Positions 4,546-27,596 of a DNA stretch of 27,596 bases are shown one piece after another. Origin of the DNA: Octopus sinensis (taxonomy: Eukaryota); the NCBI RefSeq assembly GCF_006345805.1, contig NW_021833324.1, positions 1-27,596 on the forward strand, given 5' to 3'. Every line of letters starts with the position of its first letter. The stretch's first letter is position 1. The position numbers and the translations under genes were made by a program. Below the pieces are notes generated by a model. That model made no database searches and was not told the origin of the DNA. It saw nothing but the letters and a program-made list of their open reading frames with translations.

Positions 4546-4556
4546 TACACACACGC

Positions 4557-4658
<102 letters not shown>

Positions 4659-5052
4659 GTACGGTGTTTAGACCATTGTGGGTAATAAAGAAATAGGTAC
4701 GTTGTGTGCCGCTACGGTCTGAGTTCAAATTCCGCCGAGGTCGACTTTGCGTTTCATCCTTCGGGGTCGATAAATTAACATATACACAAAGACAGACAGA
4801 CACACACACACACGCACATACATACATACATACATAGAAACATACATACATACATACATACATACTTACATACATACATAAGTTTGAGAGAGAGTGCCGC
4901 TACATTGTTGCTCAGTATCCTAGAAATAGCAACCAAATCACCCTGTCATTACCTAACCCTTGTACATAGATGATAGTTGTGATTATCCCAGTCGTATTAC
5001 CTGCTCATTTACGGCTGTCAGAGTTAGACAATAATTAATTTACTACACAGCT

Positions 5053-5945: not shown

Positions 5946-6034
5946 AACATATACACAAAGACAGACAGACACACACACACACGCACATACATACATACAC
6001 ACATACATAGAAACATACATACATACATACATAC

Positions 6035-6065
<31 letters not shown>

Positions 6066-6443
6066 CATAAGTCAGAGAGAGAGTGCCGCTACATTGTTGC
6101 TCAGTATCCTAGAAATAGCAACCAAATCACCCTGCGATTACCTAACCCTTGTACTTAGATAATAGTTGTGATTATCCCAGTCGTATTACCTGCTCATTTA
6201 CGGCTGTCAGAGTTAGACAATAATTCATTTGCTACAAAGCTAATCGAGTGAACTAATGTTAAAAATCTTAACCAAGAATAAAAATTACAACCATTGTTGG
6301 ACTTATTTTATCGTACATTCGTTAGCTTTGGCTGCTATTTCTAGCATATGGATAGCCTACTTGACGGCCTGATCGATTTGCTCGACTAAAGCCGGTGCTC
6401 CAGCATGGCCACTTCCAAATGACTGAAACAAGTAAAATAAAAT

Positions 6444-6455
<12 letters not shown>
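5821..6455. repeat. Local segmental duplication of 1-640; third partial copy at ~4670-5052
   Basis: Base-level match including non-SINE sequence (gtgccgctacattgttgctcagtatcctagaaatagcaacc...). Confidence 0.9.
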
Positions 6456-6485
<30 letters not shown>

Positions 6486-6486
6486 C

Positions 6487-6525
<39 letters not shown>

Positions 6526-6544
6526 TAAAAGAACATATATATAT

Positions 6545-6787
6545 ATGTTTTTATTCACCTTGTTTCAGTCATTTGACTGTGGCCATGCTGGAGCACCGCC
6601 TTTAGTCGAGCAAATCGATCCCAATACTTATTCTTATGAAGCCTAGAGGTTCGTGCCAAGCGGCTAATTGACGGGGATGTAAACACCTCCAGCGTCGGTT
6701 GTCAAGCGATGTTCGGGGGGAGGGACAAACAGACACACACACATATATATATATATATTTATTTATATACGACGGGCTTATTTCAGT
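6545..6787 (-). mobile_element. 3' part of SINE family A, cut off by the CpG-rich block
   Basis: Matches the SINE up to gacgggcttatttcagt at 6787; shares an internal deletion with the 1262-1532 copy. Confidence 0.8.
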
Positions 6788-6959
6788 CGAAAAATAACAA
6801 GTTAAATGATTTTATTTTTCACGTAAAATCGAAATTGCTAATATCGAAATTACGACCGCTACATTACGAACAAAACTACAGGGACGTCGTGGTTTCTTTA
6901 ATCGTAAAGAAAACAAAAAGTGCCACCGTGGGGCCGCCAGCTACGCCTTTGGCCCGCGT

Positions 6960-7280
6960 GCTCGTATAGCAAAACGTAAACATCCGGTGAATTTATGCTT
7001 CAAGTTACGGTACGAAGCAATGTCAACAAAACTCTAGCGTGGTGGCTATCGGGAAGATAATACAAAGTTTCGCATACGATCACCGCGTCACGCCGCGTTG
7101 TCGTATATCAAAACGTAAACATCCGGTAAATTTATGCTTCAAGTTACGGTACGAAGCAATGTCAACAAAACTCTAGCGTGGTGGCTATCGGGAAGATAAT
7201 ACAAAGTTTCGCATACGATCACCGCCTCACGCCGCGTTGTCGTATATCAAAACGTAAACATTCGGTAAATTTATCCTTCA
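6960..7280. repeat. 139-bp tandem repeat, ~2.3 copies
   Basis: aaaacgtaaacat(c/t)cgg recurs at 6971, 7110 and 7249; the first two units are nearly identical. Confidence 0.9.
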
Positions 7281-7797
7281 CCTTACGATATGCACCGGGA
7301 AAATACACATACGTGGACTGACCCGTAATTAAAAAAAATCAGACCCGTAAGCTTACGGATCGGCCCACGCTGGATAGTCACGCTCTAGGTGACCGTCGCA
7401 CGCCGGTCGCCTGCGTCTCCGCCGCCGTACTGTGCGTGAAATCGAAAGCACGAAACTAAACGCGCGATATCGTCCGTACGTATAAAAACAGCGACGTGGT
7501 CCGACCCGTAAGTCGTAGGAGGTGCTCAGACCGCAAGGAAACGGATCGGCCCCGGCTGGATAGTCACGCTCTAGGTGACCGTCGCACCCCAAGGGGGCCC
7601 AGACTATATTAGGGGATGAACATCAGGCAAAAATTAGCCAGCCGGCAAGATTCGTATTCTCAGTTAATTTCTGGACGCCTTGCTATACTGTTCCCAGTTC
7701 GATATCGTCCTACAACGGTTTGCTTTGCCAAAAATTGTCCGCACTTGCCCGCGTACGTTAGCTTTTCGCGGTGGTTCGCTCCTTCTCTCGCGTTCGT

Positions 7798-10172
7798 GAG
7801 TTCGATATCAGCCAGGACGTCGCGGCCCGTAGCTTTGCGTTTTTATTTATTTATTTTATTGTTCGTTCGTTCGGTAGCGTTGCTGTGATGTTATGTTGGT
7901 AAAGTAAACGTCACGAGTTCGATATCAGGCAGGGCCTCGCGGCCCGAAGCGCAACATTTTTTTTTTTTTGCTCGCTCGTTCGGTAGCGTTGCTGTGTTCA
8001 GTGATGTTATGTTGGGAAAGTAAACGTCACGAGTTCGATATCCGGCAGGTCCTCGCGGCCCGAAGCGTAATATTATTTTTTTTTTTGTTCGCTCGTTCGG
8101 TAGCGTTGCGGTGTTCAGTGATGTTATGTTGGTAAAGTAAACGTCACGAGTTCGATATCAGTCAGGGCCTCGCGGCCCGAAGCGTGATATTTTTTTTTTT
8201 TTTCGCTCGTTCGGTAGCGTTGCGTTGTTCAGTGATGTTATGTTGGTAAAGTAAACGTCACGAGTTCGATATCAGGCAGGGCCTCGCGGCCCGAAGCGTA
8301 ATTCTTTTTTTTTTTTGTTCGCTCGTTCGGTAGCGTTGCGTTGTTCAGTGATGTTATGTTGGTAAAGTAAACGTCACGAGTTCGATATTAGGCAGGGCCT
8401 CGCGGCCCGAAGCGTGAAATTTTTTTTTTTTTTAGTTCGCTCGTTCGGTAGCGTTGCGGTGTTTAGTGATGTTTTGTTGGTAAAGTAAACGTCACGAGTT
8501 CGATATTAGGCAGGGCCTCGCGGCCCGAAGCGTGAAGTTTTTTTTTTTTAGTTCGCTCGTTCGGTAGCGTTGCGGTGTTTAGTGATGTTTTGTTGGTAAA
8601 GTAAACGTCACGAGTTCGATATCAGGCAGGACCTCGCGGCCCGAAGCGTAACATTTTTTTTTTTTGCTCGCTCGTTCGGTAGCGTTGCTGTGTTCAGTGA
8701 TGTTATGTTGGTAAAGTAAACGTCACGAGTTCGATATCAGGCAGGTCCTCGCGGCTCGAAGCGTAATATTATATTTTTTTTTTTGTTCGCTCGTTCGGTA
8801 GCGTTGCTGTGTTCAGTGATGTTATGTTGGTAAAGTAAACGTCACGAGTTCGATATCAGCCAGGGCCTCGCGGCCCGAGGCGTAAAACTTTTTTTTTTTG
8901 TTCGCTCGTTCGGTAGCGTTGCGTTGTTCAGTGATGTTATGTTGGTAAAGTAAACGTCACGAGTTCGATATCAGGCAGGGCCTCGCGGCCCGAAGCGTAG
9001 AGTTTTTTTTTTTTTTTTTGTTCGCTCGTTCCGTAGCGTTGCGTTGTTCAGTGATGTTTTGTTGGTAAAGTAAACGTCACGAGTTCGATATCAGGCAGGG
9101 CCTCGCGGCCCGAAGCGTTATATTATTATTTTTTTTTGTTCGCTCGTTCGGTAGCGTTGCTGTGTTCAGTGATGTTATGTTGGTAAAGTAAACGTCGCGT
9201 GTTCGATATTAGGCAGGGCCTCGCGGCCCGAAGCGCAAGATTTTTTTTTTTTTTTGTTCGCTCGTTCGGTAGCGTTGCTGTGTTCAGTGATGTTATGTTG
9301 GTAAAGTAAACGTCACGAGTTCGATATCAGGCAGGTCCTCGCGGCCCGAAGCGTAATATTATTTTTTTTTTTTGTTCGCTCGTTCGGTAGCGTTGCTGTG
9401 TTCAGTGATGTTATGTTGGTAAAGTAAACGTCACGAGTTCGATATCAGGCAGGGCCTCGCGGCCCGAAGCGTGAAATTTTTTTTTTTTAGTTCGCTCGTT
9501 CGGTAGCGTTGCTGTGTTCAGTGATGTTTTGTTGGTAAAGTAAACGTCACGAGTTCGATATCAGGCAGGGCCTCGCGGCCCGAAGCGTAAAATTTTTTTT
9601 TTTTTTGTTCGCTCGTTCGGTAGAATTGCGTTGTTCAGTGATGTTTTGTTGGTAAAGTAAACGTCACGAGTTCGATATCAGGCAGGGCCTCGCGGCCCGA
9701 AGCGTAATATTATTATTTTTTTTTGTTCGCTCGTTCGGTAGCGTTGCTGTGTTCAGTGATGTTATGTTGGTAAAGTAAACGTCGCGTGTTCGATATCAGG
9801 CAGGGCCTCGCGGCCCGAAGCGCAAGATTTTTTTTTTTTGTTCGCTCGTTCGGTAGCGTTGCTGTGTTCAGTGATGTTTTGTTGGTAAAGTAAACGTCAC
9901 GAGTTCGATATCAGCCAGGGCCTCGCGGCCCGAAGCGTAAAACTTTTTTTTTTGTTCGCTCGTTCGGTAGCGTTGCTGTGTTCAGTGATGTTTATGTTGG
10001 TAAAGTAGCTTTCGCGAGTTTCATATCAGCCAGGGCCTCGCGGTCCGAAGCGTAAGATTTCTTTCTTATTTTTGTTCGCTCGTTCGGTAGCGTTGCTGTG
10101 TTCAATGATGTTATGTTGGTAAAGTAGCCTTCGCGAGTTCGATATATGAGCCAGGGCCTCGCGGCACGTAGC
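7798..10172. repeat. ~117-bp tandem array, 20 full units plus a partial unit
   Basis: Unit starts (gagttcgata) at about 7798, 7915, 8031, 8148, 8262 ... 10016, 10135. Each unit has GGGCC-TCGC-GGCCC followed by a variable T-tract. Confidence 0.97.
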
Positions 10173-10309
10173 GTTAAGTGATTGTCATACGACGCTGGTT
10201 TTCCAAACGTCCCTAAACCGGTCGGTGGTCCTCTAGCGGCGGCGTTGCCAATAACTGAAAAATGCAGCGGCGACTATGACCGACGCATGAGTATATGTGT
10301 CCGTGTGAT

Positions 10310-10790
10310 ATGGACGAGGCACGAATCGGCAACTCCTGGGGTGAGTTCTCGGTATCGAGCACGACTGGGGCCGGCGTGTCGGCGGACGAATCCCAAAGCA
10401 CGACAAAAGCCCAGCCAAACGGCGGCGGGAGAATCTCGGAGAAAGATCGCAGTGCTTAAGTAGCAGGTGATTTAGGTCGGTCGATAAGTCAAACTTATAG
10501 TCGACGTGAAGCACGAGAGTGTGTTTGTGTAATATCGGCGATGCACGAATCGGCAACTCCTGGGGTGAGTTCTCGGTATCGAGCACGACTGTGGCCGGCG
10601 TGTCGGCGGACGAATCCCAAAGCAAGACAAAGCCCAGCCAAACGGCGGCGGGAGAATCTCGGAGAAAGATCGTAGTGCTTAAGTAGCAGGTGATTTAGGT
10701 CGGTCGATAAGCCAAACTTATAGTCGACGTGAAGCACGAGAGTGTCAGTATGTGATCGACGAGGCAGGAAGCGGCGATTTCTGAGGTGAG
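10310..10790. repeat. ~224-bp direct duplication (2 copies plus a partial third)
   Basis: cacgaatcggcaactcctggggtgagttctcggtatcgagcacg at 10320 and 10544; gtgagttctcggtatcgag again at 10786 and 12301. Confidence 0.9.
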
Positions 10791-10859
10791 TTCTCGGTAT
10801 CGAGCACGAGTGGGGCCGCTGTGCCGGCGGACAACACCGGACTTTCTCGAAACTAATGG

Positions 10860-12665
10860 TGTCGTCACCCACGTACACGTGGACGTACCCACGACCAATG
10901 CTGGAAGGATGCCACGAGATACACGTGGTTGGTACTGCGACGTGGTCCGTCCCGTAAATTCCCGAAAGAAGGAAACTGCGGCGAGTATAAAGTAGGGGCC
11001 GCCAGTAGAAGGGTTGCGCTAGCTGCCCGTTGCTCCGCCGCCCTACCGTGCCCGATCTAGTAAGGCTGATGCGAACCTCGCGGTATCGCCTTCGTACACG
11101 TGGACGTACACGCGACCGATGCCGGAAGGATGTCACGAGATACACGCTGTCGATACAGAGACGTAGTCCGCCCCGTAAAATCCCGAAAGATGGCAACTGC
11201 GGCGAGTACAAAGTAGAGGCCGCCAGCGGCAGGGTTGCGCCAGGCCTGCGCCAATCGCCCGGAGCTCCGCCGCCCTGCCGTGCCCGAAATCGAAAGAACG
11301 AACCTAAGCTCGCGGTATCGCCACGTAAACCTGGACGTACACGCGACCGATGCCGGAAGGATGTCACGAGATACACGCTGTCGATACAGAGACGTAGTCC
11401 GCCCCGTAAAATCCCGAAAGATAGCAACTGCGGCGAGTATAAAGTAGAGGCCATCAGCGGCAGGGTTGCGCCAGGCCTGCGCCAATCGCCCGGAGCTCCG
11501 CCGCGTTACCGTGCCCGAAATCGAAAGAACGAACCTAAGCTCGGGGTATCGCCACGTAAACCTGGACGTACACGCGACCGATGCCGAAAGGATGTGATGA
11601 GATACACGCTGTCGATACAGAGACGTAGTCCGCCCCGTAAAATCCCGAAAGATGGCAACTGCGGCGAGTACAAAGTAGAGGCCGCCAGCGGCAGGGTTGC
11701 GCCAGGCCTGCGCCAATCGCCCGGAGCTCCGCCGCCCTGCCGTGCCCGAAATCGAAAGAACGAACCTAAGCTCGCGGTATCGCCACGTAAACCTGGACGT
11801 ACACGCGACCGATGCCGGAAGGATGTCACGAGATACACGCTGTCGATACAGAGACGTAGTCCGCCCCGTAAAATCCCGAAAGATAGCAACTGCGGCGAGT
11901 ATAAAGTAGAGGCCATCAGCGGCAGGGTTGCGCCAGGCCTGCGCCAATCGCCCGGAGCTCCGCCGCGTTACCGTGCCCGAAATCGAAAGAACGAACCTAA
12001 GCTCGGGGTATCGCCGAGTAAACCTGGACGTACACGCGACCGATGCCGAAAGGATGTGATGAGATACACGCTGTCGATACAGAGACGTGGTCCTTCCCGT
12101 AAAGTCCCGAAAGATGGAAACTGCGGCTAGAATAAGGTGGGGGGCCGCCATCGGCAGGGTGCGGCAGCCTCTCGGAGCTCCGCCGCCCTAATGTACCCGT
12201 TAGAACGAACAGAAGCTCGCGATGTCGTCCACGTACGCGTGGACGTACACGCGACCGTGTACCAGAGTTATCGACGAGGCACGAAGCGGCGAGTTCTGGG
12301 GTGAGTTCTCGGTATCGAGCTCGAGTGAGGCCGCTGTGTCGGCGGACGACACCGGACATTCTCGAAGCTAATGGTGTGACCCACGTAAACGTGGACGTAC
12401 CCGCGACCAATGCTGGAAGGATATCACGAGATACACGCTGTCGATACAGCAACGTGGTCCGTTCCGTAAATTCCCGAAAGATGGAAACTGCGGCTAGTAT
12501 AAAGTAGGGGCCGCCAGCGGCAGGGCTGCGCAAGGCCTGCACCAGTCGCCCGTTGCTCCGCCGCGTTACCGTGCCCGAAATCGAAAGAACGAACCTAAGC
12601 TCGCGGTATCGCCCGAGTACACGTGGACGTACCCGCGACCGAGGTCGGAAAAGTATCACGAGATA
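10860..12665. repeat. 231-bp GC-rich tandem array with a 462-bp dimeric higher-order repeat
   Basis: ggacgtac at 10881, 11102, 11333, 11564, 11795, 12026, 12241, 12393 and 12625. Diagnostic variants alternate (gatggc/gatagc, gccgcc/gccatc). Confidence 0.95.
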
Positions 12666-12692
12666 TACCACACAGCCACTCCTGCACCTATA
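12666..12692 (-). mobile_element. 5' head (~25 bp) of SINE family A
   Basis: taccacacagccactcctgcaccta is the reverse complement of the head at 18013-18037 with one mismatch. Confidence 0.7.
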
Positions 12693-13032
12693 TTCATTTT
12701 TCTGCATTTAACACAGCTGAGACGCCGTACACTCACACATGTATGTGCATGTATACACATAAATATATATGTTTATATATGCAATAGAAATATGCACGCA
12801 TATGTATGTATAAGTTTATATATATATATACACACATTATATTAATACATACATTTTTATACTTATTTACGTGTATATATACACATGTTAGCACATATGT
12901 ATATCTATCTATACACACACACACACACACACACACAGATTATATATATATTATATATATATATATATATATAATGTATATATGTGTGAGTCTGTATATA
13001 TGTATGTATGCATGTATCTATATATATATATA

Positions 13033-17960: not shown

Positions 17961-18012
<52 letters not shown>

Positions 18013-18015
<3 letters not shown>

Positions 18016-18405
18016 GCGCAGGAGTGGCTGTGTGGTAAGTAGCTTGTTTACCAACCACATGGTTCCGGGTACAGTCCCACTGCGTGGCATCTTGGGCAAG
18101 TGTCTTCTACTATTGCCTCGGGCCGACCAAAGCCCTGTGAGTGGATTTGTTTGATGGAAACTGAAAGAAGCCCGTCGTATATATTTATATATATATATGA
18201 GTGTGTGTGTGTGTCTGTGTTTGTCCCCCTAGCATTGCTTGACAACCGATGTTTACGTCCCCGTTACTTAGCGGTTCGGCAAAACAGACCGATAGAATAA
18301 GTACTAGGCTTACAAAAGAAAAAGTCCCGGGATCGAGTTGCTCGATAAAGGCGGTGCTCCAGCTTGGCCGCAGCCAAATGACTGAAACAAGTAAAAGAGT
18401 AAAAG
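18013..18405 (+). mobile_element. Full-length tRNA-derived SINE, family A (OR2-like, CORE-type)
   Basis: A-box-like TGGCTGTGTGG, B-box-like GGTACAGTCCC, CORE-like ATCTTGGGCAAGT, internal microsatellite, tail TGACTGAAACAAGTAAAAGA. Many partial copies in the window. Confidence 0.85.
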
Positions 18406-18539
18406 GATATATATATATACATAAATAGATATATACATAAAAAGATAGACAGATAGAGAGATAGATGGCTAGATAGATAGGGGAAAGAGTCAAACAGACA
18501 TATATATATATATACATAAATATATATATATATATATAA

Positions 18540-18582
<43 letters not shown>

Positions 18583-18590
18583 ATATATAT

Positions 18591-18643
<53 letters not shown>

Positions 18644-19093
18644 GAGGAGTGAGAGGCAGAAAGTGACGTTCCCGGATACCAACACACACACACAACATCA
18701 CACATAAATACACACACACGCACAAACATAAACAGGCGTGTATACACACACACACAGACACACCGATACACACCCCAGACATCATTCGTCTTATGTGTAT
18801 ACATGTGTATATACTCCACCCTCTCTCTCTCCCCCTTTCTCTCTCTATAGACGTATGTAATATTCATACACACTTACATATATAAATATTTACCTGCTTA
18901 TGTACATACATAAATACATACATATACACACATCCGTTAGTTTTCCTTTCTTTTTCACGTCCAAATTAATTATAATTCCTAATTAATGACTTAATTGTGA
19001 GACCTTAATGTCATTTAACTTATTTAATTCATAAAAATGCTGACAATGTCTCTTTGATTTTAAATAAATAATTTAGACAAAGTTTTGTCTAAA

Positions 19094-19185
19094 TTTCCCG
19101 CCTTTTTCTCCACGTTTTTTGTCATTCAAATTAGCGTTGCTAGGCAACATATAGAAACAATTGAACGGGAAGCGGCAGAAGTTAT
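19094..19185. promoter_or_regulatory. Candidate promoter: E2F-type TTTCCCGC (19094) and RFX X-box GTTGCTAGGCAAC (19136-19148)
   Basis: Motifs match established consensus sites and lie in locally CpG-containing, non-repetitive sequence upstream of a good splice donor. Confidence 0.5.
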
Positions 19186-19292
19186 AGAGACTCCAGACTG
19201 GGCGGTTTGTGTGATACCAGACCAGAAATATCACCAGACACCCTTAAGCATGGGTTGTCACAGATGGATTTACCCGTCATCTTCTCTACGAG
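19170..19292 (+). other. Candidate first exon of an unidentified plus-strand gene
   Basis: Ends at the donor CGAG|GTATGC (19292/19293); ATGs at 19250 and 19264. No product recognisable. Confidence 0.35.
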
Positions 19293-19516
19293 GTATGCTT
19301 ATGTGTGTGCAAGAAGGCTACGTATAATAATGATGTATATTTATATTCCTATATAAATGTATTGGCAATCCTGAGTCGGAAATTATCCAATACCTGAAAT
19401 ATTCCAACATCTTTTGATATTTCTTTTTTAAACTTGTACATATACATGAATAAATGTATACACAAACACACATACATAATATATATATATACACACCTAC
19501 ATTTCTACAGTTATAT

Positions 19517-19564
<48 letters not shown>

Positions 19565-20708
19565 CATCCTGTGGCATAACTACAGATGAACACCCCATCG
19601 ACTTTGTTTCCTCATAACTTCCAGGAAGATGGATATTTTTAATGAAACTTCCACTTTCATTTTCTAAGAGAAAAGCATGCTCTCAAAAGAAATCCTCTTT
19701 TACAAAGCTCTTATTTAAATCCCTGTGGATAAATCCCAGCAAGAATCTTCTCAGGCTCTCCAATATTTTACAATTATATAAAGAGAAAGAATCGGGGGCC
19801 AGAAAGTGGGGCTAAAAATAATCAGAGATTTTTTAAATATTCTTTTTATTTTTTTATAACATAAATGTGTTTCTGAGGGAAAAAATGAGAAAAAAAAAAG
19901 AAGACAAGGAGGGTGGTGTGCTAGAAACAACAGCCAAATCTCCCTTAAATCACACACTTTTTCCCTCGAACCCTTACAAAACATTTTGCCAACAAATTTC
20001 TTTTTAATCGTAATCTACATCGTTTGAAAGTTATTTCTACCAAATTTCATTCAAAAATACCCATTTTTATACAAAAATACCTTTATACACATGTATATAC
20101 CTACATATACACACATGTCTTTGCTATGTTTTTTAAACACATAAAACTCATAGATGCATACTTTTATAATATTTTACACTTAAACCGCCACAGGACAATA
20201 TTTTCAGAGTTGCTTCTTAAAGTGTCCTTCACTTTTTTTATGACAAACGATACAAATTTCAGAGTATTTGGCTGTTATTTCTAGCATGATGTTAGGCCAT
20301 CTATAGGACAATATTTGACATGGATGCTTTGCAAATTGTCCTTGGATTTTTATTTGTGATGAGACAAGAATGTGAAGGTTTAGGTGGCTCTTTCTAGCAT
20401 GAAATGAGACCATATACAGGTCAATTTTATTTATGAATGCTTCTTATCTGTCCTTCAAATTTTATATGAAAAGTAAAGTGGTTTCTATTTCTAGCGTGAA
20501 AAATGACCAGCTATGGGAAAGCTTTTACTGAATGCTTCTTAAAGTGTCCTTCTCTTTTTTTATGAACCCCCAACAACAACCCTACGAGGACGAAAGGCAA
20601 TGTTTGTGCGTGTGTGCAGTTGGAATGTCACTGCAACAACAACAACAATCTATTCTTATTAAACGTTAAAAACTGTCAGATGCAGACTGCACACACGCAC
20701 GCACAACG

Positions 20709-20984
20709 CTGATGACGACGATGATGATGATGGTGATGATGGTGATGATGACGACGACGATGATGACGATGATGGTGATGATGATGATGATGACGACGAT
20801 GATGATGATGATGACGATGATGATGGCGATGATGGTGATGATGATGATGGTGATGATGACGACGATGATGATGATGATGACGATGATGGTGATGATGATG
20901 ATGGTGATGATGATGACGATGATGATGATGATGATGATGATGATGACGATGATGGTGATGATGATGATGATGACGATGATGACG

Positions 20985-21015
<31 letters not shown>

Positions 21016-21050
21016 CGATGATGATGGTGATGATGATGACGATGATGGTG

Positions 21051-21081
<31 letters not shown>

Positions 21082-21270
21082 CGATGATGATGGTGATGAT
21101 GATGACGATGATGATGGTGATGATGATGATGACGATGATGATGACGATGATGATGACGATGACGCGACCACGACGGCGGAGACGACGACCACGACGGCGT
21201 AGACGGCCACGACGACGACGGCGGAGACGACGACGGCGAAGACGGCCTCGACGACCACGACGACGGCGGC
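20709..21270. repeat. Compound trinucleotide microsatellite (GAT/GAC/GGT)n grading into GACG-rich variants
   Basis: Directly visible, ~560 bp. Confidence 0.95.
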
Positions 21271-21352
21271 GGTGGTCGTCTGCCTTTTAATGGAGAATCA
21301 ATGATTATGAAAGTCTCTGCTTTCGGACCAGACATTCCTATACATACATGCA

Positions 21353-21428
<76 letters not shown>

Positions 21429-21687
21429 CACAAACATACATACATATAGCCTTATTTCTATACATACATTCCTAAATATGTGTATATATATATATATAAA
21501 CACATGTACATATACTGTATATAAATATATACACACACACAAAGAGAGTGTGTTGAGGAATGTTACAACAATAAGTGTGTAGAATGCAATGTATGCGATG
21601 CAGGTTCGATTCCCAAGCGAAGCCATTTACAACAACAACAACAATAATAATAAGAAGAAGATTGAAGTTTAATATTTCTGGAAATAT

Positions 21688-24600
21688 TTATTTGTCAAAA
21701 TAAAAGAAAGCAAAAGATTGAGGTCCAAGAATAATTCCAAAAACCATCAAAGAATTGTCTGAAACATCCAAACCAAGAACTTCAGAGACTTCATTATCAT
21801 CCCGTCTGAGGAGTAAATATTTTGGATTATCTTTTAATCCCCGGATTTCATCATCTTCAGATGTTTCCTCTTCAATATGTCGAGGTATTTCGTAAATATT
21901 GTTTATTTTATCTGTTATATAAACACATTCACCAATTATGGTCAGACGAGCTCTTGGAATATAACATTCCAGAACATAAAACCTTCCTCCTCCTATTCTT
22001 ATCCTCCTCACCAAAGACTTTTCTCTGAACCATTCCACAAAACACAAAACTTCCCCCCCTCCAGACCCCTTCTCCTCCATCTCCTTCTTCAAAACAACAA
22101 CATCACCAAAAGATGTGACTCCCACATCATCCAACACCCCTTCATCTCCCTCCAACCTTCCCAATCTCCCCATCTTCCCACGACACACTTCATCTTTACA
22201 TTTCCCATCTTTGATATCAACCACATCCACATAATAAGGGTCAAAGATGAAGGAGTCTTTGCAATAATAGTAATCCTTGTTTTTCTCCCATATTCTTTTG
22301 TATTTCTTGTCTCTCTCTTCTTGAGTTATGTCTCTAATATAATGACCACCACACACGAGTTGATTGTCGTTGTATTTATATATCCTGTGGTAGTATTTCT
22401 CAGTTCTGATGGTTTTTAAACGACAGAGATCCCTGTTGAAGACCCTCATTTCTCTCCCAAAGGCGACAATGAAACGTTCCTCTGTCCACCGACATATGTC
22501 CAGTGCTGGTCGTTGTTGTTGTTCATGTTGAAGTATGTCCACTGTTGTTGTTGTTGTTCTGATTAATGTGACACTTTCTCGAAACATCAACACACTCACA
22601 TTCTCATCTAACTTAATTAGTTTACTGTTCCGGTCCCTAATGTCCCTCAAATCATAATCAACAGGTTCTTCGAATGCAGGAATGGAAAAAGGGACCATTG
22701 CTGTCCTATATGGAAGTCTCCTCACTAATATTTCATCAATTCCTGAATTATTAATCTCCGCTATGTAATTACCACATCTCACCTTTAATCTACCTTTACC
22801 AATTATTTCACCTGATTTACCTCTTCCTCTTCCTCCTCCATCTCCATCTCCTCCTCTGTATTCCAAGTTGTTAATTAATTCATTACTGAATATTTCCTTG
22901 TTCGTTTCAGATGTAATGGAAGGGAAACGAAGACCAGAATCAAGATTTAATGACGACACAGATTCCAGAATGTTCACTTGGTCCCCATCAATCTTTATGC
23001 AATGACATTCAATCAATTCATTATGTACACACCAGTAAATACCCACCACTTTTCTCCATATTACACCATAAGGGATGAGACTCGACCAAACTTGAGATGT
23101 CTGCAAATCTTCTCCATTCAGTTGAAATATTTCTTTCCTTTTAGGAACCGTGGCCATTATGTGTGATTCTTGTGTAAAACACACACCACCAACTAAACTT
23201 GCAACATTTCTGTGACGTAGCAACTGGCCGTCTTCATCGAATATTTTAACATTTCCATTATTGGCTTTTTCACACACAACTGTCTTTCCTTCCTCAGAGA
23301 CATCAAAATCTTTTACTTGAACAGGACATTCGTCTGTTTGTAAACGAGCAACCGGGAAGCTGTCTCGATTCACCATAAACAACCCTTCAACATACAATTC
23401 ATTCTCTCTTCCCCATTTCCCAAGGCTTCCAACAAACCTTGGTCCTTTACAGTCTATACTGGAGAATTCTACTTCATCTTTATAAATTCTTTTATTTAAA
23501 AATATTCTCTTGTATTCCCCATTCTGGGTCAAACACAAAATATTTCGATATCCAGATGAACCAAAACATTTCTCCCACCCACCATAAATGTACAAAAAAC
23601 TGTCATCAATTGTCATCCTGTCATCACCAAAATAATACTCCATGTAGTGTCTGACTGAATGTAAATATTGACCACCACTGTTGAAGAAAATGATGAATCT
23701 CCTGTTGAAGACAATGATGACATCTTCATCAGTAACTTTAATATCCTGGATTATATCAGAATAACCTCCATCTTCGTCTCTCCTTATTAATGGTTCAGGT
23801 ATGTCTACTTTTTTTATTTCCTTCACACTCGAATGTATTTCATCAATATCAACAAAATGCAAATGTCTTCCATCTCTCAATTCACTAAAAACCAGTTGAT
23901 TATTTGATAAAGAAGCCACACATTCATAATTATTTCTCGTTTGGTAACTTACCAACGACAATGGAAACTCCACTTTTAATGTCTGCAGTTGGTATTTATT
24001 ATTAAAAGGAACCTCAGTCGTAATGACCAGTGTGTTTGACTGCCATCGACACATTTTAATATAATCATAAACATTCACTTTGATTGAATCCAAAAGGTGA
24101 CCATCCAATGTGAATATCTTAATGTTTCCATTCTTCCTGTCACATCCTGCAATCAGATTATTTTCAGTAAGAACCAAACGTTTAATCTCCGCTGGTTCTT
24201 TGTCTCCCAAATGTTTAGGGAGAGGAATACGTCTGCCTTTATCAGAAACTGTCAGGTCCTGTAGATATAAAGTGGAAGACAACATTTCACTGAGAGAAAT
24301 GTGTCTGGAAAATACATCCACCAGGTCGATATAATAATTAAGTTGATTATTAGTAACGAGATCATTAACCAACAAATTCTGATCGTTTATGGCAAACATA
24401 CGGCTTCTGTCTATCAGATAAACAGACGTTTGGTCAATAGATCCACCTTGGAGACTGAGGGGACGTTTCACTTGGGACATTAAAACACTGGGGACCATCT
24501 GACGACCGCCATGACCACCACCACCTATTCTAGTGTTGTACTGAAAAGCTTTTCCCCTAGTAACAATTAATAGCTTTTCTGTTTTCTTGTCTATTGATAA

Positions 24601-26079
24601 TGATTTCACAAACACAGGGATATTAATTGTCTTAATTACTTCAACTTGATTATAATAATTGATGGCTAAAATGTCTAAATGTGATGGTTTATCACAATAA
24701 CAAACAATTTCACATTCACCCATCTTACATACCCGTACATAAGGCTGCCTTAATGATACACTTCTCACTGTCTTTGATAGGTTTCCGATGACCCTTAATT
24801 GTTTCTGTAGGGGTAATGTGACCCCTATATGATTACAATCCCATCGACATATATCTGTGGCTGTAGACGGCAGAGATAATTTGGACACAATGTCTCCTTC
24901 CTCAGTAATGTACATCAAACAATCATGTTTGATGTCGGACACCACCAACTGTCCATTGGACAGATTACATATTTCGCCAATGACAAGTTTTTGGTCATTC
25001 TCCTTTTCTTTGAGTTGTAGATTTAGATTTCTGATATAAGGACTTTTAATGGGTAAAAGACAGTCAGATGACCAGTCTTGATACTTGTAAAGAAGAACCC
25101 TGTTGAGTTGAGTGTCCGGGACATAAAGAGTTCCTTGGAAAACAGCAATGTGAGGGTGAACAGGGAAAGGCAGTTCCCACTGCCATTTCATTTGTCCATA
25201 TAGATCGTAACATCTGAGAACAGAGTGTCTCCTGAAGAGGACATAGAAATAAACATTATCAGAGTAGATGTGATGAGGGTAGCCATAGAATGGAAGGTAT
25301 TTTTGAAAAAGTTTTTCTCCACATGTGGAATAAAATACCATTTTATTTTCGTTTCCATCTACGACTACAAAATTAATTGGAGTTGCAGCAATGCTGACAT
25401 TATGATGTCCCAGAGAAATTCTTTCTGCGATGTCAACTTTATCTTCGTTGATCAATAGGATTTGGACCTCGCTTTTGTTTTCATTGGTGGTCACAGCTAA
25501 ATACTTATTTGATACAATATGACATATTTTCATGTAACCAGTTTGCACCTTTATTAAAGGGCCTTTTCTTAGTTCAGGACAGGTGATATACTGAAATCCT
25601 TTCATTTCACAATAAAATACCAGGAATCTGTTTGCGTTTATTCTACAACAGAAAGAAGGAAGCTCAAGGAAAACTGAATTATTTTGGTTAATTATTTCCC
25701 CGTTATCAGTGAATAATTTAGCTTTCTTGTTTTTGTAAATTATTAATATAGAAGATGTAGACATAGGTAGAATATTAGTAACATTGTAGCAATCCTCAAT
25801 ATAAATATAGTTGTTCAATGTTGGGGTCCATAGCTGGTGGTTATATGACTGCCTGGTCCAAAAGTCTTCATTTGTTCCAATGATATGAAGGACATCAAAA
25901 CAATCGGTTACAAAAATGTTTTCTTTGCCAACAGAAATATGGCGGCATTTCATGCCAATTTCTCTTGTTGTCACAGCACCTGTACCTGATATCCGATAAA
26001 TAATATGTCCCTGAAGGACATAAAAATGGTTTTGGTACACAGAGATGTGGCTTGGAATGTCCAGGGAATTGGTATCCAC
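21688..26079 (-). CDS. Main 1463-codon ORF of a large multi-beta-propeller protein (NHL/TolB-like repeats, resembling C-terminal domains of mollusc TRIM-like proteins); true frame begins further upstream
   Basis: 4.4-kb stop-free ORF in an AT-rich genome, with complex globular-type sequence. Recurrent blade motifs: VIGEICNLSNGQLVVSDIKHDCLMYITEEG, EIKRLVLTENNLIAGCDRKNGNIKIFTLDG, VKDFDVSEEGKTVVCEKANNGNVKIFDEDG, and D(I/M)CRW-type motifs about every 230-290 aa. The track start is a GTG; the frame is open to ~26121. Family assignment is from motif recognition only. Confidence 0.9.
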   Translation of the reverse strand: MDTNSLDIPSHISVYQNHFYVLQGHIIYRISGTGAVTTREIGMKCRHISVGKENIFVTDCFDVLHIIGTNEDFWTRQSYNHQLWTPTLNNYIYIEDCYNVTNILPMSTSSILIIYKNKKAKLFTDNGEIINQNNSVFLELPSFCCRINANRFLVFYCEMKGFQYITCPELRKGPLIKVQTGYMKICHIVSNKYLAVTTNENKSEVQILLINEDKVDIAERISLGHHNVSIAATPINFVVVDGNENKMVFYSTCGEKLFQKYLPFYGYPHHIYSDNVYFYVLFRRHSVLRCYDLYGQMKWQWELPFPVHPHIAVFQGTLYVPDTQLNRVLLYKYQDWSSDCLLPIKSPYIRNLNLQLKEKENDQKLVIGEICNLSNGQLVVSDIKHDCLMYITEEGDIVSKLSLPSTATDICRWDCNHIGVTLPLQKQLRVIGNLSKTVRSVSLRQPYVRVCKMGECEIVCYCDKPSHLDILAINYYNQVEVIKTINIPVFVKSLSIDKKTEKLLIVTRGKAFQYNTRIGGGGHGGRQMVPSVLMSQVKRPLSLQGGSIDQTSVYLIDRSRMFAINDQNLLVNDLVTNNQLNYYIDLVDVFSRHISLSEMLSSTLYLQDLTVSDKGRRIPLPKHLGDKEPAEIKRLVLTENNLIAGCDRKNGNIKIFTLDGHLLDSIKVNVYDYIKMCRWQSNTLVITTEVPFNNKYQLQTLKVEFPLSLVSYQTRNNYECVASLSNNQLVFSELRDGRHLHFVDIDEIHSSVKEIKKVDIPEPLIRRDEDGGYSDIIQDIKVTDEDVIIVFNRRFIIFFNSGGQYLHSVRHYMEYYFGDDRMTIDDSFLYIYGGWEKCFGSSGYRNILCLTQNGEYKRIFLNKRIYKDEVEFSSIDCKGPRFVGSLGKWGRENELYVEGLFMVNRDSFPVARLQTDECPVQVKDFDVSEEGKTVVCEKANNGNVKIFDEDGQLLRHRNVASLVGGVCFTQESHIMATVPKRKEIFQLNGEDLQTSQVWSSLIPYGVIWRKVVGIYWCVHNELIECHCIKIDGDQVNILESVSSLNLDSGLRFPSITSETNKEIFSNELINNLEYRGGDGDGGGRGRGKSGEIIGKGRLKVRCGNYIAEINNSGIDEILVRRLPYRTAMVPFSIPAFEEPVDYDLRDIRDRNSKLIKLDENVSVLMFRESVTLIRTTTTTVDILQHEQQQRPALDICRWTEERFIVAFGREMRVFNRDLCRLKTIRTEKYYHRIYKYNDNQLVCGGHYIRDITQEERDKKYKRIWEKNKDYYYCKDSFIFDPYYVDVVDIKDGKCKDEVCRGKMGRLGRLEGDEGVLDDVGVTSFGDVVVLKKEMEEKGSGGGEVLCFVEWFREKSLVRRIRIGGGRFYVLECYIPRARLTIIGECVYITDKINNIYEIPRHIEEETSEDDEIRGLKDNPKYLLLRRDDNEVSEVLGLDVSDNSLMVFGIILGPQSFAFFYFDK

Positions 26080-26082
26080 CTC

Positions 26083-26270
26083 AATAACTGCTGACCATCC
26101 ACATTGTAACAGGTAACCCTGTTAATATTGGAAAAGGATACTAAAAGTTTATTTTGTGCTCCTACAGCAATATCTGAAGGGGTTTCTTTGGTTATGAATT
26201 CGTATTTTATTCTATTCTCTTCCCAGTCAATGACGTATATGGTCCGACCAAACATTTCTACACCTATAGG
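26083..26270 (-). CDS. Middle segment of the same beta-propeller gene, between two -1 frameshifts
   Basis: Frame reads (P)IGVEMFGRTIYVIDWEENRIKYEFITKETPSDIAVGAQNKLLVSFSNINRVTCYNVDGQQL, which is blade-like. One extra T at 26083-26084 gives GQQLFEVDTNSLDIPSHISVY, paralleling GEKLFQKYLPFYGYPHHIYSD later in the protein. Confidence 0.75.
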
Positions 26271-27079
26271 TAGTTAGAATGTTCAAAATAAGAAACCAAG
26301 ATTAATCCTAGCTGAATTCTTTTGATTCGCAAACTTAAAGGGTTGATAATAAGAACCATTTTTCGGAAGGGCAGGGTGGCGAGGACTGTGTCTTCACTGA
26401 TTCTGGTAAAATCAGTGACAGAAGATGAGCAACGAACATCGTTTCTGTTGCCGTCTCTTGTTATACAACATATTGTCATACAGTGGCGGGAATATGTTAC
26501 AATACCCCCTTGTATGACAACAATATTGGATATTGGGTTGCTTAAGTCTTCACCAGATTCCTCAATCTCTACTTCTCTGGTCACAACTGGCCGAAGAGGC
26601 CGAAATTTTGTGGTTACTTTTGGTGGTTCAATGGTCTTGTGGTTGTATGGGTTACAGGTGACATAAATGTCAAAGAGTCTTTGTTGAAACCAATCAAGGT
26701 TTTGGTGAACAAAATCATTATTTTGTTTTGCAAATTCCAGAAATCTTGGCATTTTACATTTGATATTACGTAAAACTCGAGATCCATCTAAACTCAGAGA
26801 GTGCATGTGATTACATTTATCCTTTACATAATCTATAAACGTATTGATGTGGTCTGTTTTGATTAGTGTTCGGTAACATGTCACAATATGAAGGAAACTT
26901 GGTAACATGGACTTTTCCTGTTCTTTAGATTTCTTTGTGTCTTTTCTTTCCTGTTCTTCTCTTTTCTTTGTGTTTTGTGTATGTAATATTTGGGTAAGAT
27001 TTGGTGTAGTTTCCTTATAAATTGCTGTTGTGGCAGGAATGAGAGCCAACATTTTGTTTTCTTCATTAATCTTCTCCAT
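26264..27079 (-). CDS. N-terminal segment of the beta-propeller gene: charged/helical region followed by the start of the first propeller
   Basis: 271-aa ORF from an ATG with an in-frame upstream TAA. ISNIVVIQGGIVTYSRH...VTDFTRISEDTVLATLPFRKMVLII matches the downstream unit ATDICRWDCNHIGVTLPLQKQLRVI. Confidence 0.75.
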   Translation of the reverse strand: MEKINEENKMLALIPATTAIYKETTPNLTQILHTQNTKKREEQERKDTKKSKEQEKSMLPSFLHIVTCYRTLIKTDHINTFIDYVKDKCNHMHSLSLDGSRVLRNIKCKMPRFLEFAKQNNDFVHQNLDWFQQRLFDIYVTCNPYNHKTIEPPKVTTKFRPLRPVVTREVEIEESGEDLSNPISNIVVIQGGIVTYSRHCMTICCITRDGNRNDVRCSSSVTDFTRISEDTVLATLPFRKMVLIINPLSLRIKRIQLGLILVSYFEHSNYL

Positions 27080-27596
27080 TTTATGAATATAGAATTATTA
27101 TCTTTTTCTGTTAAATATATTCTTTTCTGTGGATTTTGTTTTCTTCCTTTCGAATACAATTTATCTCTTCAAAATTCACTAATTTTTACATGAAAGCTGA
27201 AATAAAATGAAAACTTTATTAGTTTTGTGAAAAGCTTTTGATAAAATAATATTTACTTGATTCATTCAAAGAATTTCAAGGAAAACACACATTTCATTAA
27301 ATATATTAACAAATTGTTTATTTGACAGTGAAGTTAAACATTTAAACTGTTTCAATGGAATAATCATTAGAAATAAAACTTGAAGATATAAATACACCAT
27401 TATCTTTATTGACTGAATATAAGTGATGGTGAAAGGTTTTGTAGTAAGAAGGAATATAAATATTTTGTTGAGGTTATTTCTACAGATATTATCGGTAGAA
27501 ATTATAGCCAGGACTGATTTCCGCTACAACATTTCATATCGAAATGTCAGACGGAAACAAACAATGAGATCAAAGAGAAAAACATCTGTTTTTTGT

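What the first reader, a model, noticed from the sequence alone, without database searches (positions are those of the whole stretch)
21688..27079. Apparently intronless ~1797-aa protein with about six tandem, highly diverged beta-propeller units
Seen: equivalent anchors at ~26410 (TDFTRI), 25650 (FCCRIN), 24850 (TDICRW), 24050 (IKMCRW), 23180 (GVCFTQ) and 22490 (LDICRW), spaced 690-870 bp. The N-terminus is charged/helical with no obvious RING, B-box, signal peptide or TM segment. Established: TRIM-NHL-like proteins normally carry a single propeller, and NHL domains bind RNA or proteins. Inference: a lineage-specific multi-propeller scaffold or sensor, possibly in innate immunity or RNA binding.
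Basis: partly seen in the sequence, partly recalled or inferred. Interest (0 to 1): 0.75.

Follow-up and report, generated by a model that had tools for sequence, protein, structure and literature searches.

The report
Broken octopus six-propeller gene copy
This is a frame-shifted copy of an undescribed, octopus-only gene family whose ~1,800-residue proteins string six NHL-like beta-propellers behind a short helical head, and two of the six propellers change much faster than the rest, as expected of a recognition protein.

Summary
In this window the gene is not one ORF. Two indels found only in this copy split it into three frames (271, ~57 and 1463 codons). Intact single-exon paralogues of 1798-1801 aa exist in Octopus vulgaris, at 96% nucleotide identity including flanks. 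AlphaFold models show an N-terminal helical domain followed by all-beta units of about 24 strands each. Foldseek returns only multi-propeller proteins. No Pfam family reaches threshold. The units link to canonical NHL propellers only through bivalve RING/B-box proteins. In 1.84 billion representative proteins, full relatives appear only in Octopus and Argonauta. New here: paralogues are mosaics of unit-sized blocks, and propellers 4 and 6 show dN/dS of 2.0-3.3 while 2, 3 and 5 mostly show about 0.5. Best reading: a cytosolic multi-propeller binding platform with two diversifying recognition modules. The architecture is well supported. The function is inferred and no ligand is known. I found no paper on the family.

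The parts
21688..27079 (-). Whole gene copy: a family member collinear with the intact 1798-aa paralogue P0002, read here in three frames
   Evidence: tblastn of P0002 covers residues 1-271, 256-335 and 334-1798. Nucleotide identity to the P0002 gene plus flanks is 96%.
26543..27079 (-). N-terminal domain (P0002 residues 1-182): a disordered Lys/Glu-rich head, helices at about 66-146, then the conserved linker HKTIEPPKVTTKFRPL
   Evidence: AlphaFold model 2 places helices at 66-98, 103-123, 125-130 and 132-146 with pLDDT 70-79. It has no similarity to the units or to TRIM coiled coils. Coordinates.
25780..26542 (-). Propeller unit 1 (anchor TDFTRI at 26416-26399). Both frame breaks fall inside it.
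   Evidence: Model 2 residues 186-412 have pLDDT 77-88 and about 24 strands. Unit 1 occurs in two old sequence classes among paralogues, with dS 0.6-0.77 against 0.03-0.10.
26269..26275 (-). Frame break 1: a 2-nt surplus (TCTAACTACCTATAGG against TCTA--CGCTTATAGG) that creates the TAG at 26266-26264
   Evidence: It is unique to the window among seven copies compared.
26083..26084 (-). Frame break 2: one T missing from a TTT run (TTATTGAGG against TTATTTGAGG)
   Evidence: It is unique to the window among seven copies compared.
24985..25779 (-). Propeller unit 2 (anchor FCCRIN at 25653-25636)
   Evidence: Model 2 residues 421-670 have pLDDT 71-89 and six four-stranded sheets. Under purifying selection, dN/dS 0.3-0.6.
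24187..24984 (-). Propeller unit 3 (anchor TDICRW at 24858-24841). Its C-terminal third carries a Gly/Arg-rich insert and is poorly modelled.
   Evidence: Model 2 residues 703-855 have pLDDT 74-86. This unit gives the best sequence link to bivalve TRIM-like propellers.
23314..24186 (-). Propeller unit 4 (anchor IKMCRW at 24060-24043), a fast-evolving module
   Evidence: Model 1 residues about 286-568 have pLDDT 70-88 and 24 strands. dN/dS is 1.3-2.4 among close copies. Variable sites are enriched in loops.
22627..23313 (-). Unit 5 (anchor GVCFTQ at 23187-23170). It is the shortest unit, has a Gly/Arg-rich insert, and is the most conserved among paralogues (93-99% aa identity). Only its first ~70-100 residues are recognisably homologous to other units.
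   Evidence: hhalign U4-U5 E 2.6e-4. pLDDT mostly below 50. Identity table.
21691..22626 (-). Propeller unit 6 (anchor LDICRW at 22503-22486), a fast-evolving module. The stop codon is at 21688-21690.
   Evidence: Model 1 residues 820-1133 have pLDDT 75-91 and about 25 strands. dN/dS is 1.2-3.7 among close copies.
17989..27596 (.). Segmentally duplicated block (gene, at least 517 bp upstream and about 3.7 kb downstream) shared with the P0002 locus
   Evidence: blastn aligns window 17989-27596 to L001 19716-9481 at 92-94% identity. Partial sharing with L002 and L003.

Best explanation
The region is one copy of an Octopoda-restricted multigene family with a single coding exon. It is most likely from Octopus vulgaris or a very close relative.

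Architecture. Intact members encode ~1,660-1,900-residue proteins with no signal peptide or TM segment, so they are presumably cytosolic. Each has an N-terminal helical domain of about 180 residues, a conserved linker, and six tandem homologous units of 229-311 residues. Each unit is predicted to fold as a six-bladed, NHL-like beta-propeller. The units arose by duplication of a whole propeller of the kind found at the C-terminus of molluscan RING/B-box (TRIM-like) proteins. The RING and B-box are absent here.

Family evolution. The family spreads by segmental duplication of blocks of about 10 kb or more, many of them on one 29-Mb chromosome. Unit-sized blocks are exchanged between paralogues. 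Units 2, 3 and 5 evolve under purifying selection and units 4 and 6 under diversifying selection concentrated in loops.

Inferred mechanism. The protein is a multivalent binding platform. The conserved propellers hold constant partners or the overall architecture. Propellers 4 and 6 are variable recognition surfaces for fast-changing ligands, which could be protein or RNA of pathogens, mobile elements or other rapidly evolving partners.

This copy. It carries two private frame-breaking indels in unit 1. It is therefore either a very recently inactivated pseudogene or an intact gene with assembly indel errors.

Shown versus inferred. Shown: repeat structure, fold class, taxonomic range, mosaicism, selection pattern and frame breaks. 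Inferred: cytosolic location, binding-platform role and kind of ligand.
For: Repeat: (P/E down to 6e-7; 14 of 15 unit pairs in register).

Fold: (model 1, U4 and U6 at pLDDT 70-91, 24-25 strands each). (model 2, U1-U3 at pLDDT 71-89). (Foldseek top hits are all multi-propeller proteins such as LRP2, LRP4, DDB1, IFT-A and Utp21, E 1e-13 to 2e-22).

NHL link: (U3 against mussel P0078, prob 91-93%; against P0080, prob 95%; U1, U4 and U5 against P0086, E 3-6e-4 in register). Searches show these bridging proteins carry RING/B-box and match TRIM3, Brat, Thin, teneurin and PknD-type NHL propellers.

Range: (only Octopus and Argonauta). Argonauta P0059 is collinear over residues 4-1798.

Single exon.

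Purifying selection on a conserved single-copy member: P0063/P0083, dN/dS 0.45.

Mosaicism: (dS differs more than 10-fold between units of the same gene pair).

Diversifying selection: (P0002-P0006, U4+U6: 106 nonsynonymous against 10.8 synonymous changes, p 0.0018; contrast with U2+U3+U5 p 5e-6). (four methods agree; all 10 close pairs give 2.0-3.3). (variability is higher in loops).

Frame breaks. Recent or artefactual break: (72 private substitutions, 3.7 nonsense changes expected if neutral, 0 seen, P 0.026).
Against: No Pfam or PDB sequence match is significant for the family itself, so the NHL assignment rests on transitive links.

Unit 5 and the end of unit 3 are modelled with low confidence. 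Model pTM is 0.35-0.47, so the arrangement between propellers is unknown. I could not run a domain-level structural comparison.

The dN/dS pairs share sequences and recombination is evident, so the pairs are not independent. Conversion from unsampled divergent donors could contribute to the pattern.

No expression, localisation or ligand data were available. Many family copies are broken, so part of the family may be decaying.
Confidence: 0.6

Rival explanations
1. The window copy is an intact, functional gene and the two frame breaks are assembly errors, not mutations.
For: The rest of the copy has no stop in 1,786 aligned codons. Its private substitutions (17 synonymous, 55 nonsynonymous) resemble those of intact copies, and 0 nonsense changes are seen where 3.7 are expected under neutrality. 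The O. vulgaris reference assembly is Nanopore-based and polished with short reads (PMC10700109), which is error-prone in multi-copy regions. One break is a T lost from a TTT run.
Against: The other break is a 2-nt surplus with adjacent substitutions and is not a homopolymer slip. Other loci also hold multiply broken copies (L003 minus strand, L008). The source assembly of this window is unknown.
Confidence: 0.4
2. The family is a decaying swarm of duplicated pseudogenes with no present function, and the high dN/dS only reflects relaxed constraint.
For: Many fragmentary gene models and broken copies exist. Overall dN/dS between copies is 0.5-1.1.
Against: Several 5.4-kb ORFs are intact in DNA of about 36% GC. 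Units 2, 3 and 5 show dN/dS significantly below 1 (p 0.001). Units 4 and 6 exceed 1 significantly, which relaxation alone cannot produce. The six-unit architecture is retained in Argonauta and in a single-copy member with dN/dS 0.45.
Confidence: 0.1
3. The proteins are RNA-binding post-transcriptional regulators, like the NHL domains of TRIM71 and Brat, rather than sensors of foreign ligands.
For: The closest recognisable fold class is the NHL propeller, whose TRIM-NHL members bind RNA (established knowledge). The faint PDB profile hit is TRIM71 (E 0.27).
Against: The similarity is far too weak to transfer function. Diversifying selection on two propellers and copy-number expansion are not typical of conserved developmental RNA regulators.
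Confidence: 0.15
4. The ORF belongs to a mobile or selfish element. That would explain the missing introns, the many copies and the broken copies.
For: It has a single exon and is multi-copy. Some gene models are fused to DUF4371 transposase-like or C2H2 segments.
Against: Copies share about 10 kb of flanking DNA, as in segmental duplication. I looked for no terminal repeats, and Pfam found no transposase, integrase or reverse transcriptase in the ORF. The fused models look like annotation run-ons, as shown for the MIB2-like case. Most copies lie on one chromosome.
Confidence: 0.05

Closest known systems
TRIM-NHL proteins (TRIM2, TRIM3, TRIM71, Brat) and the expanded RING/B-box plus propeller proteins of bivalves
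   Same: The repeating unit matches the whole C-terminal six-bladed propeller of bivalve RING/B-box proteins, and in register. Those proteins match canonical NHL domains. The blades carry the motif 'xxLVVxDxxNxxIKIFxxDGxLL'.
   Different: There is no RING, B-box or recognisable TRIM coiled coil. There are six propellers instead of one. Pfam NHL is not reached at threshold.
Multi-propeller scaffolds: DDB1, CPSF160 and SF3B3 (three propellers), and tandem WD40 proteins such as Utp21 and IFT-A subunits
   Same: These are the best Foldseek matches. All are cytosolic or nuclear proteins built from several propellers that serve as binding platforms.
   Different: Those propellers are seven-bladed WD40-like. 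There is no sequence similarity, and TM-scores are only 0.13-0.28. They are ancient conserved single-copy genes, not lineage-specific diversifying families.
LDL-receptor family YWTD propeller arrays (LRP2, LRP4)
   Same: They carry strings of six-bladed propellers and are top Foldseek hits.
   Different: They are secreted or membrane proteins with EGF and LDL-A modules between the propellers. No such modules, signal peptide or TM segment are present here.
Diversifying recognition families: TRIM5 and fish finTRIM B30.2 loops, and fungal HET-E/D/R NLRs with hypervariable WD40 repeats (from general knowledge, not tested here)
   Same: They share lineage-specific expansion, clustered paralogues, exchange between paralogues and dN/dS above 1 confined to the binding module.
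   Different: The folds or domain contexts differ. Here no effector domain (RING, NACHT, death fold) accompanies the variable propellers.

Membership tests
TRIM-NHL (RBCC-NHL) proteins | N-terminal RING finger | tested here: not met
   No Pfam RING in the window ORFs or in P0002, P0052, P0054, P0059 or P0063. The N domain lacks Cys/His zinc motifs.
TRIM-NHL (RBCC-NHL) proteins | B-box zinc finger(s) | tested here: not met
   No B-box hit in any family member. The bridging bivalve proteins do have one.
TRIM-NHL (RBCC-NHL) proteins | Coiled coil between the B-box and the C-terminal domain | tested here: inconclusive
   Helices at residues 66-146. hhalign against the coiled-coil regions of P0086 and P0087 gives E 0.4-0.8, meaning no detectable homology.
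TRIM-NHL (RBCC-NHL) proteins | A single C-terminal NHL propeller | tested here: not met
   There are six tandem units.
NHL-repeat six-bladed beta-propeller (Pfam PF01436 / TolB-like six-bladed superfamily) | Six four-stranded blades closing a propeller | tested here: met
   DSSP of the AlphaFold models gives about 24 strands per unit for U1, U2, U4 and U6 at pLDDT 70-91. U3 is partly modelled and U5 poorly. Closure itself was not inspected because no coordinates were available.
NHL-repeat six-bladed beta-propeller (Pfam PF01436 / TolB-like six-bladed superfamily) | Pfam NHL match at or above the gathering score | tested here: not met
   Best scores are 13 bits (window middle piece, E 0.11), then 18.5 bits against a cutoff of 20 in P0063 and 17.1 bits in P0080. 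A scan of 27 members gave only sub-threshold DUF4934 and WDR90 propeller hits.
NHL-repeat six-bladed beta-propeller (Pfam PF01436 / TolB-like six-bladed superfamily) | Homology to bona fide NHL propellers through intermediate sequences | tested here: met
   U3 to P0078: prob 91-93%, E about 1e-6. U3 to P0080: prob 95%. U1, U4 and U5 to P0086: E 3-6e-4. P0078 matches teneurin NHL at 1e-6. P0086 matches TRIM3 at 3e-9 and Brat at 3e-8. The link is transitive and of moderate strength.
DDB1/CPSF160/SF3B3 triple-propeller family | Three seven-bladed WD40-like propellers plus a C-terminal helical domain, with sequence homology | tested here: not met
   Here there are six units of about 24 strands. 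No Pfam hit to the CPSF_A/MMS1 families. The Foldseek similarity is at fold level only, TM 0.13-0.28.
LDLR-family YWTD propeller arrays | Signal peptide, EGF-like modules flanking each propeller, TM anchor | tested here: not met
   No EGF, LDL-A or Ldl_recept_b Pfam hits. No hydrophobic segment: the highest 19-residue Kyte-Doolittle mean is 1.4.

The most novel reading that the evidence does not exclude
Octopods possess a previously unrecognised family of cytosolic recognition receptors. It is built from six NHL-like propellers, and it generates diversity by shuffling whole-propeller cassettes between dozens of paralogues and by positive selection on the loops of propellers 4 and 6. That would make it a germline-encoded, modular sensor system for viruses, mobile elements or self/non-self cues, with no counterpart described in other animals.
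Probability: 0.2. Interest if true: 0.8.

Novelty: new variant of a known kind. Interest (0 to 1): 0.5.

Why it matters
Cephalopod genomes are known for a few large lineage-specific expansions, such as protocadherins, C2H2 zinc fingers and GPCRs. This family is another one: dozens of 5.4-kb single-exon genes with a six-propeller architecture that I found in no paper and that no domain database recognises. If the selection pattern holds, conserved propellers plus two diversifying ones with cassette exchange between paralogues, it gives a concrete candidate for a variable recognition system in an animal without adaptive immunity. It would also be a natural example of whole-propeller duplication and divergence for protein evolution and design. 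For annotation, many 'hypothetical protein' fragments on one O. vulgaris chromosome are pieces of this family. Some fused gene models (to MIB2-like, C2H2 or DUF4371 segments) are probably artefacts.

Tried and rejected
- **Pfam scans.** Scans of the window ORFs, intact paralogues and 27 aligned members found nothing at threshold.
- **PDB sequence profile search.** It gave no significant hit. TRIM71 NHL scored E 0.27.
- **Word-indexed homology searches.** Searches with the mussel propeller, and with a P0080+P0078 alignment, returned almost nothing new: only P0086 and P0087.
- **N domain against TRIM coiled coils.** No similarity.
- **Look-up of the window's own ORF products.** They are not on record, so the source record could not be identified.
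- **A MIB2-like Ank-RING protein sharing the linker and the start of unit 1**. The shared exon belongs to a broken family copy 25 kb downstream of the RING exon, so I rejected it as a probable annotation run-on.
- **Long ORFs at 10.2-12.7 kb and 20.6-21.6 kb.** They are translations of satellites and microsatellites, not genes.
- **Rfam and tRNA scans of the window.** Both empty.
- **Literature searches.** Five searches by accession, by cephalopod/TRIM/NHL terms and by novel-gene terms found no description of the family.
- **Chance recurrence of the anchor motif.** Rejected on the in-register profile alignments.
Full report
**1. What is in the sequence**

On the minus strand, 27079-21688 is not a single ORF. 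It reads in three frames: 27079-26264 (271 codons, then TAG), a middle stretch of about 57 codons (26255-26083), and 26079-21688 (1463 codons).

A protein search with the long piece returned 57 proteins. All are from Octopus vulgaris, O. sinensis or O. bimaculoides, all are 'uncharacterized', and typical full length is 1,780-1,800 aa.

The closest full-length one is P0002 (1798 aa). It is encoded by one uninterrupted exon on O. vulgaris chromosome OX597841.1 at 9.57 Mb. The window aligns to that gene and its flanks at 96% nucleotide identity over 6.2 kb. Homology continues over window 17989-27596, so the copies arose by segmental duplication of at least 9.6 kb.

Relative to P0002, every indel in the window copy is a multiple of three except two:
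- a 2-nt surplus within 26269-26275;
- one T missing from a TTT run at 26083-26084.

Six other copies, from both sequence classes of that region, lack both changes.

As it stands the copy is frame-shifted.

**2. Pseudogene or assembly error**

Outside the two indels there is no stop in 1,786 aligned codons. The copy has 72 private substitutions (17 synonymous, 55 nonsynonymous), a ratio like that of intact copies. If it had evolved neutrally, 3.7 nonsense changes would be expected, and none is seen (P 0.026). The breaks are therefore either very recent or artefacts.

The O. vulgaris reference assembly is Nanopore-based with short-read polishing (PMC10700109), which leaves indel errors in multi-copy regions. 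I could not establish which assembly the window comes from, because its ORF products are not on record. Other loci hold copies broken in several places: L003 minus strand 3903-9346 and L008 66806-71662. Real decay therefore also occurs in the family. I leave the question open, at about 60:40 for a real, recent pseudogene.

**3. The repeat**

All six anchor motifs are at the stated positions, 684-873 bp apart.

Aligning an 18-sequence family alignment against itself gives off-diagonal matches (P0002 numbering):

| Segments aligned | P |
|---|---|
| 976-1354 to 711-1056 | 4e-6 |
| 1514-1723 to 993-1168 | 1e-5 |
| 1516-1627 to 730-810 | 5e-5 |
| Matches tying in the first two units | 0.006-0.02 |

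I set the unit boundaries 42 residues upstream of each anchor. Each unit begins there with an NHL-like blade, for example 'ENNLIAGWDESNRNIKIFTLDGHLMDSIKV':

| Part | P0002 residues |
|---|---|
| N domain | 1-182 |
| U1 | 183-436 |
| U2 | 437-701 |
| U3 | 702-967 |
| U4 | 968-1258 |
| U5 | 1259-1487 |
| U6 | 1488-1798 |

Profile-profile comparison of the unit sub-alignments:

| Pair | E |
|---|---|
| U3-U6 | 6e-7 |
| U4-U6 | 1.4e-6 |
| U3-U4 | 5e-5 |
| U4-U5 | 2.6e-4 |
| U1-U3, U1-U2 | about 1e-3 |

In 14 of 15 pairs the best local alignment starts at the same offset in both units. That is what duplication of a whole unit predicts. Generic blade-to-blade similarity would not give it. The N domain matches none of the units.

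**4. Fold**

I predicted two overlapping AlphaFold models from family alignments.
- Model 1 (window 25089-21691, 1133 aa) has mean pLDDT 57.8. It is confident for U4 (70-88) and U6 (75-91), moderate for the first part of U3, and poor for U5.
- Model 2 (P0050, family residues 1-968) has mean pLDDT 67.8. It shows helices at 66-146 (70-79) and confident all-beta U1 (77-88), U2 (71-89) and U3 up to residue 855 (74-86).

Strand counts are about 24 per unit, meaning six four-stranded blades.

Foldseek against the PDB returned only multi-propeller proteins for both models: LRP2/megalin, LRP4, DDB1, CPSF160, IFT-A and Utp21, at E 1e-13 to 2e-22. TM-scores are low (0.13-0.28) because the relative placement of the propellers is not predicted (pTM 0.35-0.47).

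Tandem propellers are therefore well supported for five of the six units. U5 is the shortest unit, has a Gly/Arg-rich insert, and is homologous to the others only over its first two blades. It is probably a propeller, but that is not shown.

**5. Which kind of propeller**

No Pfam family reaches threshold in any member. The NHL repeat appears only below its cutoff: 13 bits in the window, 18.5 against 20 in P0063, and 17.1 in P0080. A PDB sequence profile search shows TRIM71 NHL at E 0.27.

The useful link is indirect. Beyond octopods, the exhaustive profile search found a mussel protein, P0078, at E 2e-4. P0078 has a B-box above threshold, a weak RING, and a C-terminal propeller.

- U3 aligns with the start of the P0078 propeller at hhalign probability 91-93% (E about 1e-6). 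It aligns with a 169-aa Logan fragment, P0080, at 95%.
- U1 and U5 also align to P0078 in register.
- U1, U4 and U5 align in register to P0086, a RING/RBCC protein, at E 3-6e-4.
- P0078 matches the teneurin NHL region at 1e-6.
- P0086 matches TRIM3 NHL at 3e-9 and Brat at 3e-8.
- The Mytilus B-box protein P0087 matches PknD-type 'Pizza' propellers.

Each octopus unit therefore corresponds to the entire C-terminal propeller of molluscan TRIM-NHL-like proteins. The family itself lacks RING, B-box and any detectable TRIM coiled coil, so it is not a TRIM protein.

**6. Distribution and age**

In 1.84 billion representative proteins, only 29 matched at E up to 1e-3. All substantial hits are Octopus or Argonauta hians.

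- Argonauta P0059 (1913 aa) is collinear with P0002 over residues 4-1798 at 35% identity. The six-unit architecture therefore predates the Octopus-Argonauta split.
- A divergent member sits on another chromosome: P0063 in O. vulgaris (OX597815.1, 66.5 Mb) and P0083 in O. bimaculoides. It also has a single exon and is collinear at 32% identity.
- That member evolves under purifying selection between the two species (dS 0.059, dN 0.027, dN/dS 0.45).
- Most of the expanded subfamily lies on one 29.19-Mb chromosome, with copies at 9.57, 9.80, 10.31, 21.9 and 22.66 Mb.

No relative turned up in squids, cuttlefish or other molluscs. I do not know how well the library covers those genomes.

**7. How the family evolves (new here)**

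Paralogues are mosaics.

| Part | aa identity among O. vulgaris copies |
|---|---|
| U5 | 93-99% |
| U2, U3 | 83-96% |
| U1 | two classes, about 65% or about 95% |
| N domain | several types, 27-45% or 74-96% |
| U4, U6 | 57-88% |

Synonymous divergence differs more than ten-fold between units of the same gene pair:
- P0002-P0006: U1 has dS 0.71, against 0.02-0.06 elsewhere.
- P0002-P0016: U4, U6 and N have dS 0.38-0.55, against 0.01-0.10 elsewhere.

This pattern requires exchange of unit-sized blocks between paralogues, by recombination or gene conversion.

Within the youngest group (P0002, P0003, P0005, P0006 and the window copy), all ten pairs show dN/dS of 2.0-3.3 for U4+U6. For U2+U3+U5, eight pairs fall between 0.46 and 0.72. 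The other two, P0002-P0005 (1.22) and P0005-window (1.63), have very low dS (about 0.02).

For the two intact genes P0002 and P0006:
- U4+U6 carry 106 nonsynonymous against 10.8 synonymous differences (binomial p 0.0018 for an excess over neutrality).
- U2+U3+U5 show a deficit (dN/dS 0.43, p 0.001).
- The contrast between the two sets gives Fisher p 5e-6.
- NG86, LWL85, YN00 and ML agree.

Variable positions in U4 and U6 are 1.5-2.3 times more frequent outside strands and cluster in specific loops.

Caveats: the pairs share sequences, recombination blurs the phylogeny, and I did not fit site models.

**8. Most likely mechanism**

Shown: a protein with no signal peptide or TM segment, made of a helical head and six homologous propellers, of which some are conserved and two diversify.

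Inferred: propellers are binding platforms, so six in a row give a multivalent scaffold. I propose that the conserved propellers hold constant partners or the architecture. Propellers 4 and 6 would be exchangeable, positively selected recognition surfaces.

The ligands could be proteins or RNA of pathogens or mobile elements, or other rapidly evolving partners. The variable N domain types may couple to different downstream partners.

No effector domain is present, so signalling would need partners.

I put about 0.9 on the architecture and the evolutionary pattern and about 0.3 on the recognition-platform mechanism. That gives 0.6 for the whole statement.

**9. Comparison with what is known, and novelty**

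The fold class (NHL-like six-bladed propeller) and the idea of multi-propeller scaffolds are known. New are the six-fold tandem arrangement without RING or B-box, the restriction to octopods, the single-exon multigene organisation, the cassette mosaicism and the localised positive selection. None of these was found in the searchable literature.

I rate it a new variant of a known kind. Interest is moderate at 0.5: a real, undescribed and evolutionarily unusual family, but with no functional data, and the copy in this window is broken.

Noticed in passing
window 7798-10174: A 118-bp satellite (also scored as 234 bp), about 20 copies at 90-91% identity. Each unit has a long T run next to a GC-rich segment. 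It accounts for the strong GC and AT skew at 8-10 kb.
   Followed up: no
window 10296-12167: GC-rich (54-60%) tandem repeats of 223 bp (2.4 copies) and 231 bp (5.7 copies). They produce overlapping 130-366-aa ORFs on both strands (10233-12707). These are spurious: their Pfam hits are scattered low-complexity matches.
   Followed up: partly
window 4094-4543, 5060-5944 and 823-1190: Repeats of about 180 bp (184 bp at 4094-5944, 177 bp at 823-1190). The 184-bp unit contains 'GAGTTCAAATTCC', which resembles a tRNA B box and suggests a SINE-like element. Short stretches near them (window 815-1178, and 4155-5679) also match L001 and L003. ARAGORN and Rfam found no tRNA or RNA family.
   Followed up: partly
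window 20710-21272 and 21356-21531: A (TGA)n/(GAC)n microsatellite and an (AT)n tract sit 150-1000 bp downstream of the gene's stop codon. They are in the same place in the P0002 locus. They generate spurious poly-Ser, poly-His and poly-Met ORFs at 20659-21626.
   Followed up: partly
L003:3903-9346 (minus strand), O. vulgaris OX597841.1 about 21.9 Mb: Another family copy broken into at least four frame pieces. It lies tail-to-head near the intact P0016 gene (27567-32924) and the start of P0017. Its N-terminal piece is annotated as a separate 411-aa gene.
   Followed up: partly
L008:10001-71662, O. vulgaris scaffold CATOCA020000001.1: The gene models named 'E3 ubiquitin-protein ligase MIB2-like' (P0070, P0096: ankyrin repeats plus a MIB-type RING) end in an exon at 66806-67210. 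That exon is actually the linker plus start of unit 1 of a divergent, frame-broken family copy at 66806-71662, 25 kb downstream of the RING exon. This is probably an annotation run-on, though a real RING-propeller fusion transcript is not excluded.
   Followed up: yes
Proteins P0001, P0004, P0009 (O. vulgaris gene models): These are chimeric models. P0001 holds two family copies in tandem. P0004 has a C2H2 zinc-finger array fused to a family member. P0009 has a DUF4371 transposase-like segment fused to one. All are likely merges of neighbouring features.
   Followed up: partly
L004:10001-14989 (O. vulgaris OX597815.1, 66.5 Mb) and L005:3001-8025 (O. bimaculoides CM046602.1): A single-copy, single-exon, divergent family member (P0063/P0083, 32% identity to P0002). 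It is conserved between species (94% aa identity, dN/dS 0.45). It may represent the ancestral gene from which the expanded subfamily derives.
   Followed up: partly
O. vulgaris OX597841.1 (29.19 Mb), with O. sinensis and O. bimaculoides scaffolds of 12-35 Mb: In all three Octopus species most family members sit on the smaller chromosomes or scaffolds. In O. vulgaris they span at least 9.6-22.7 Mb of one 29-Mb chromosome, which suggests a chromosome enriched for this family.
   Followed up: no
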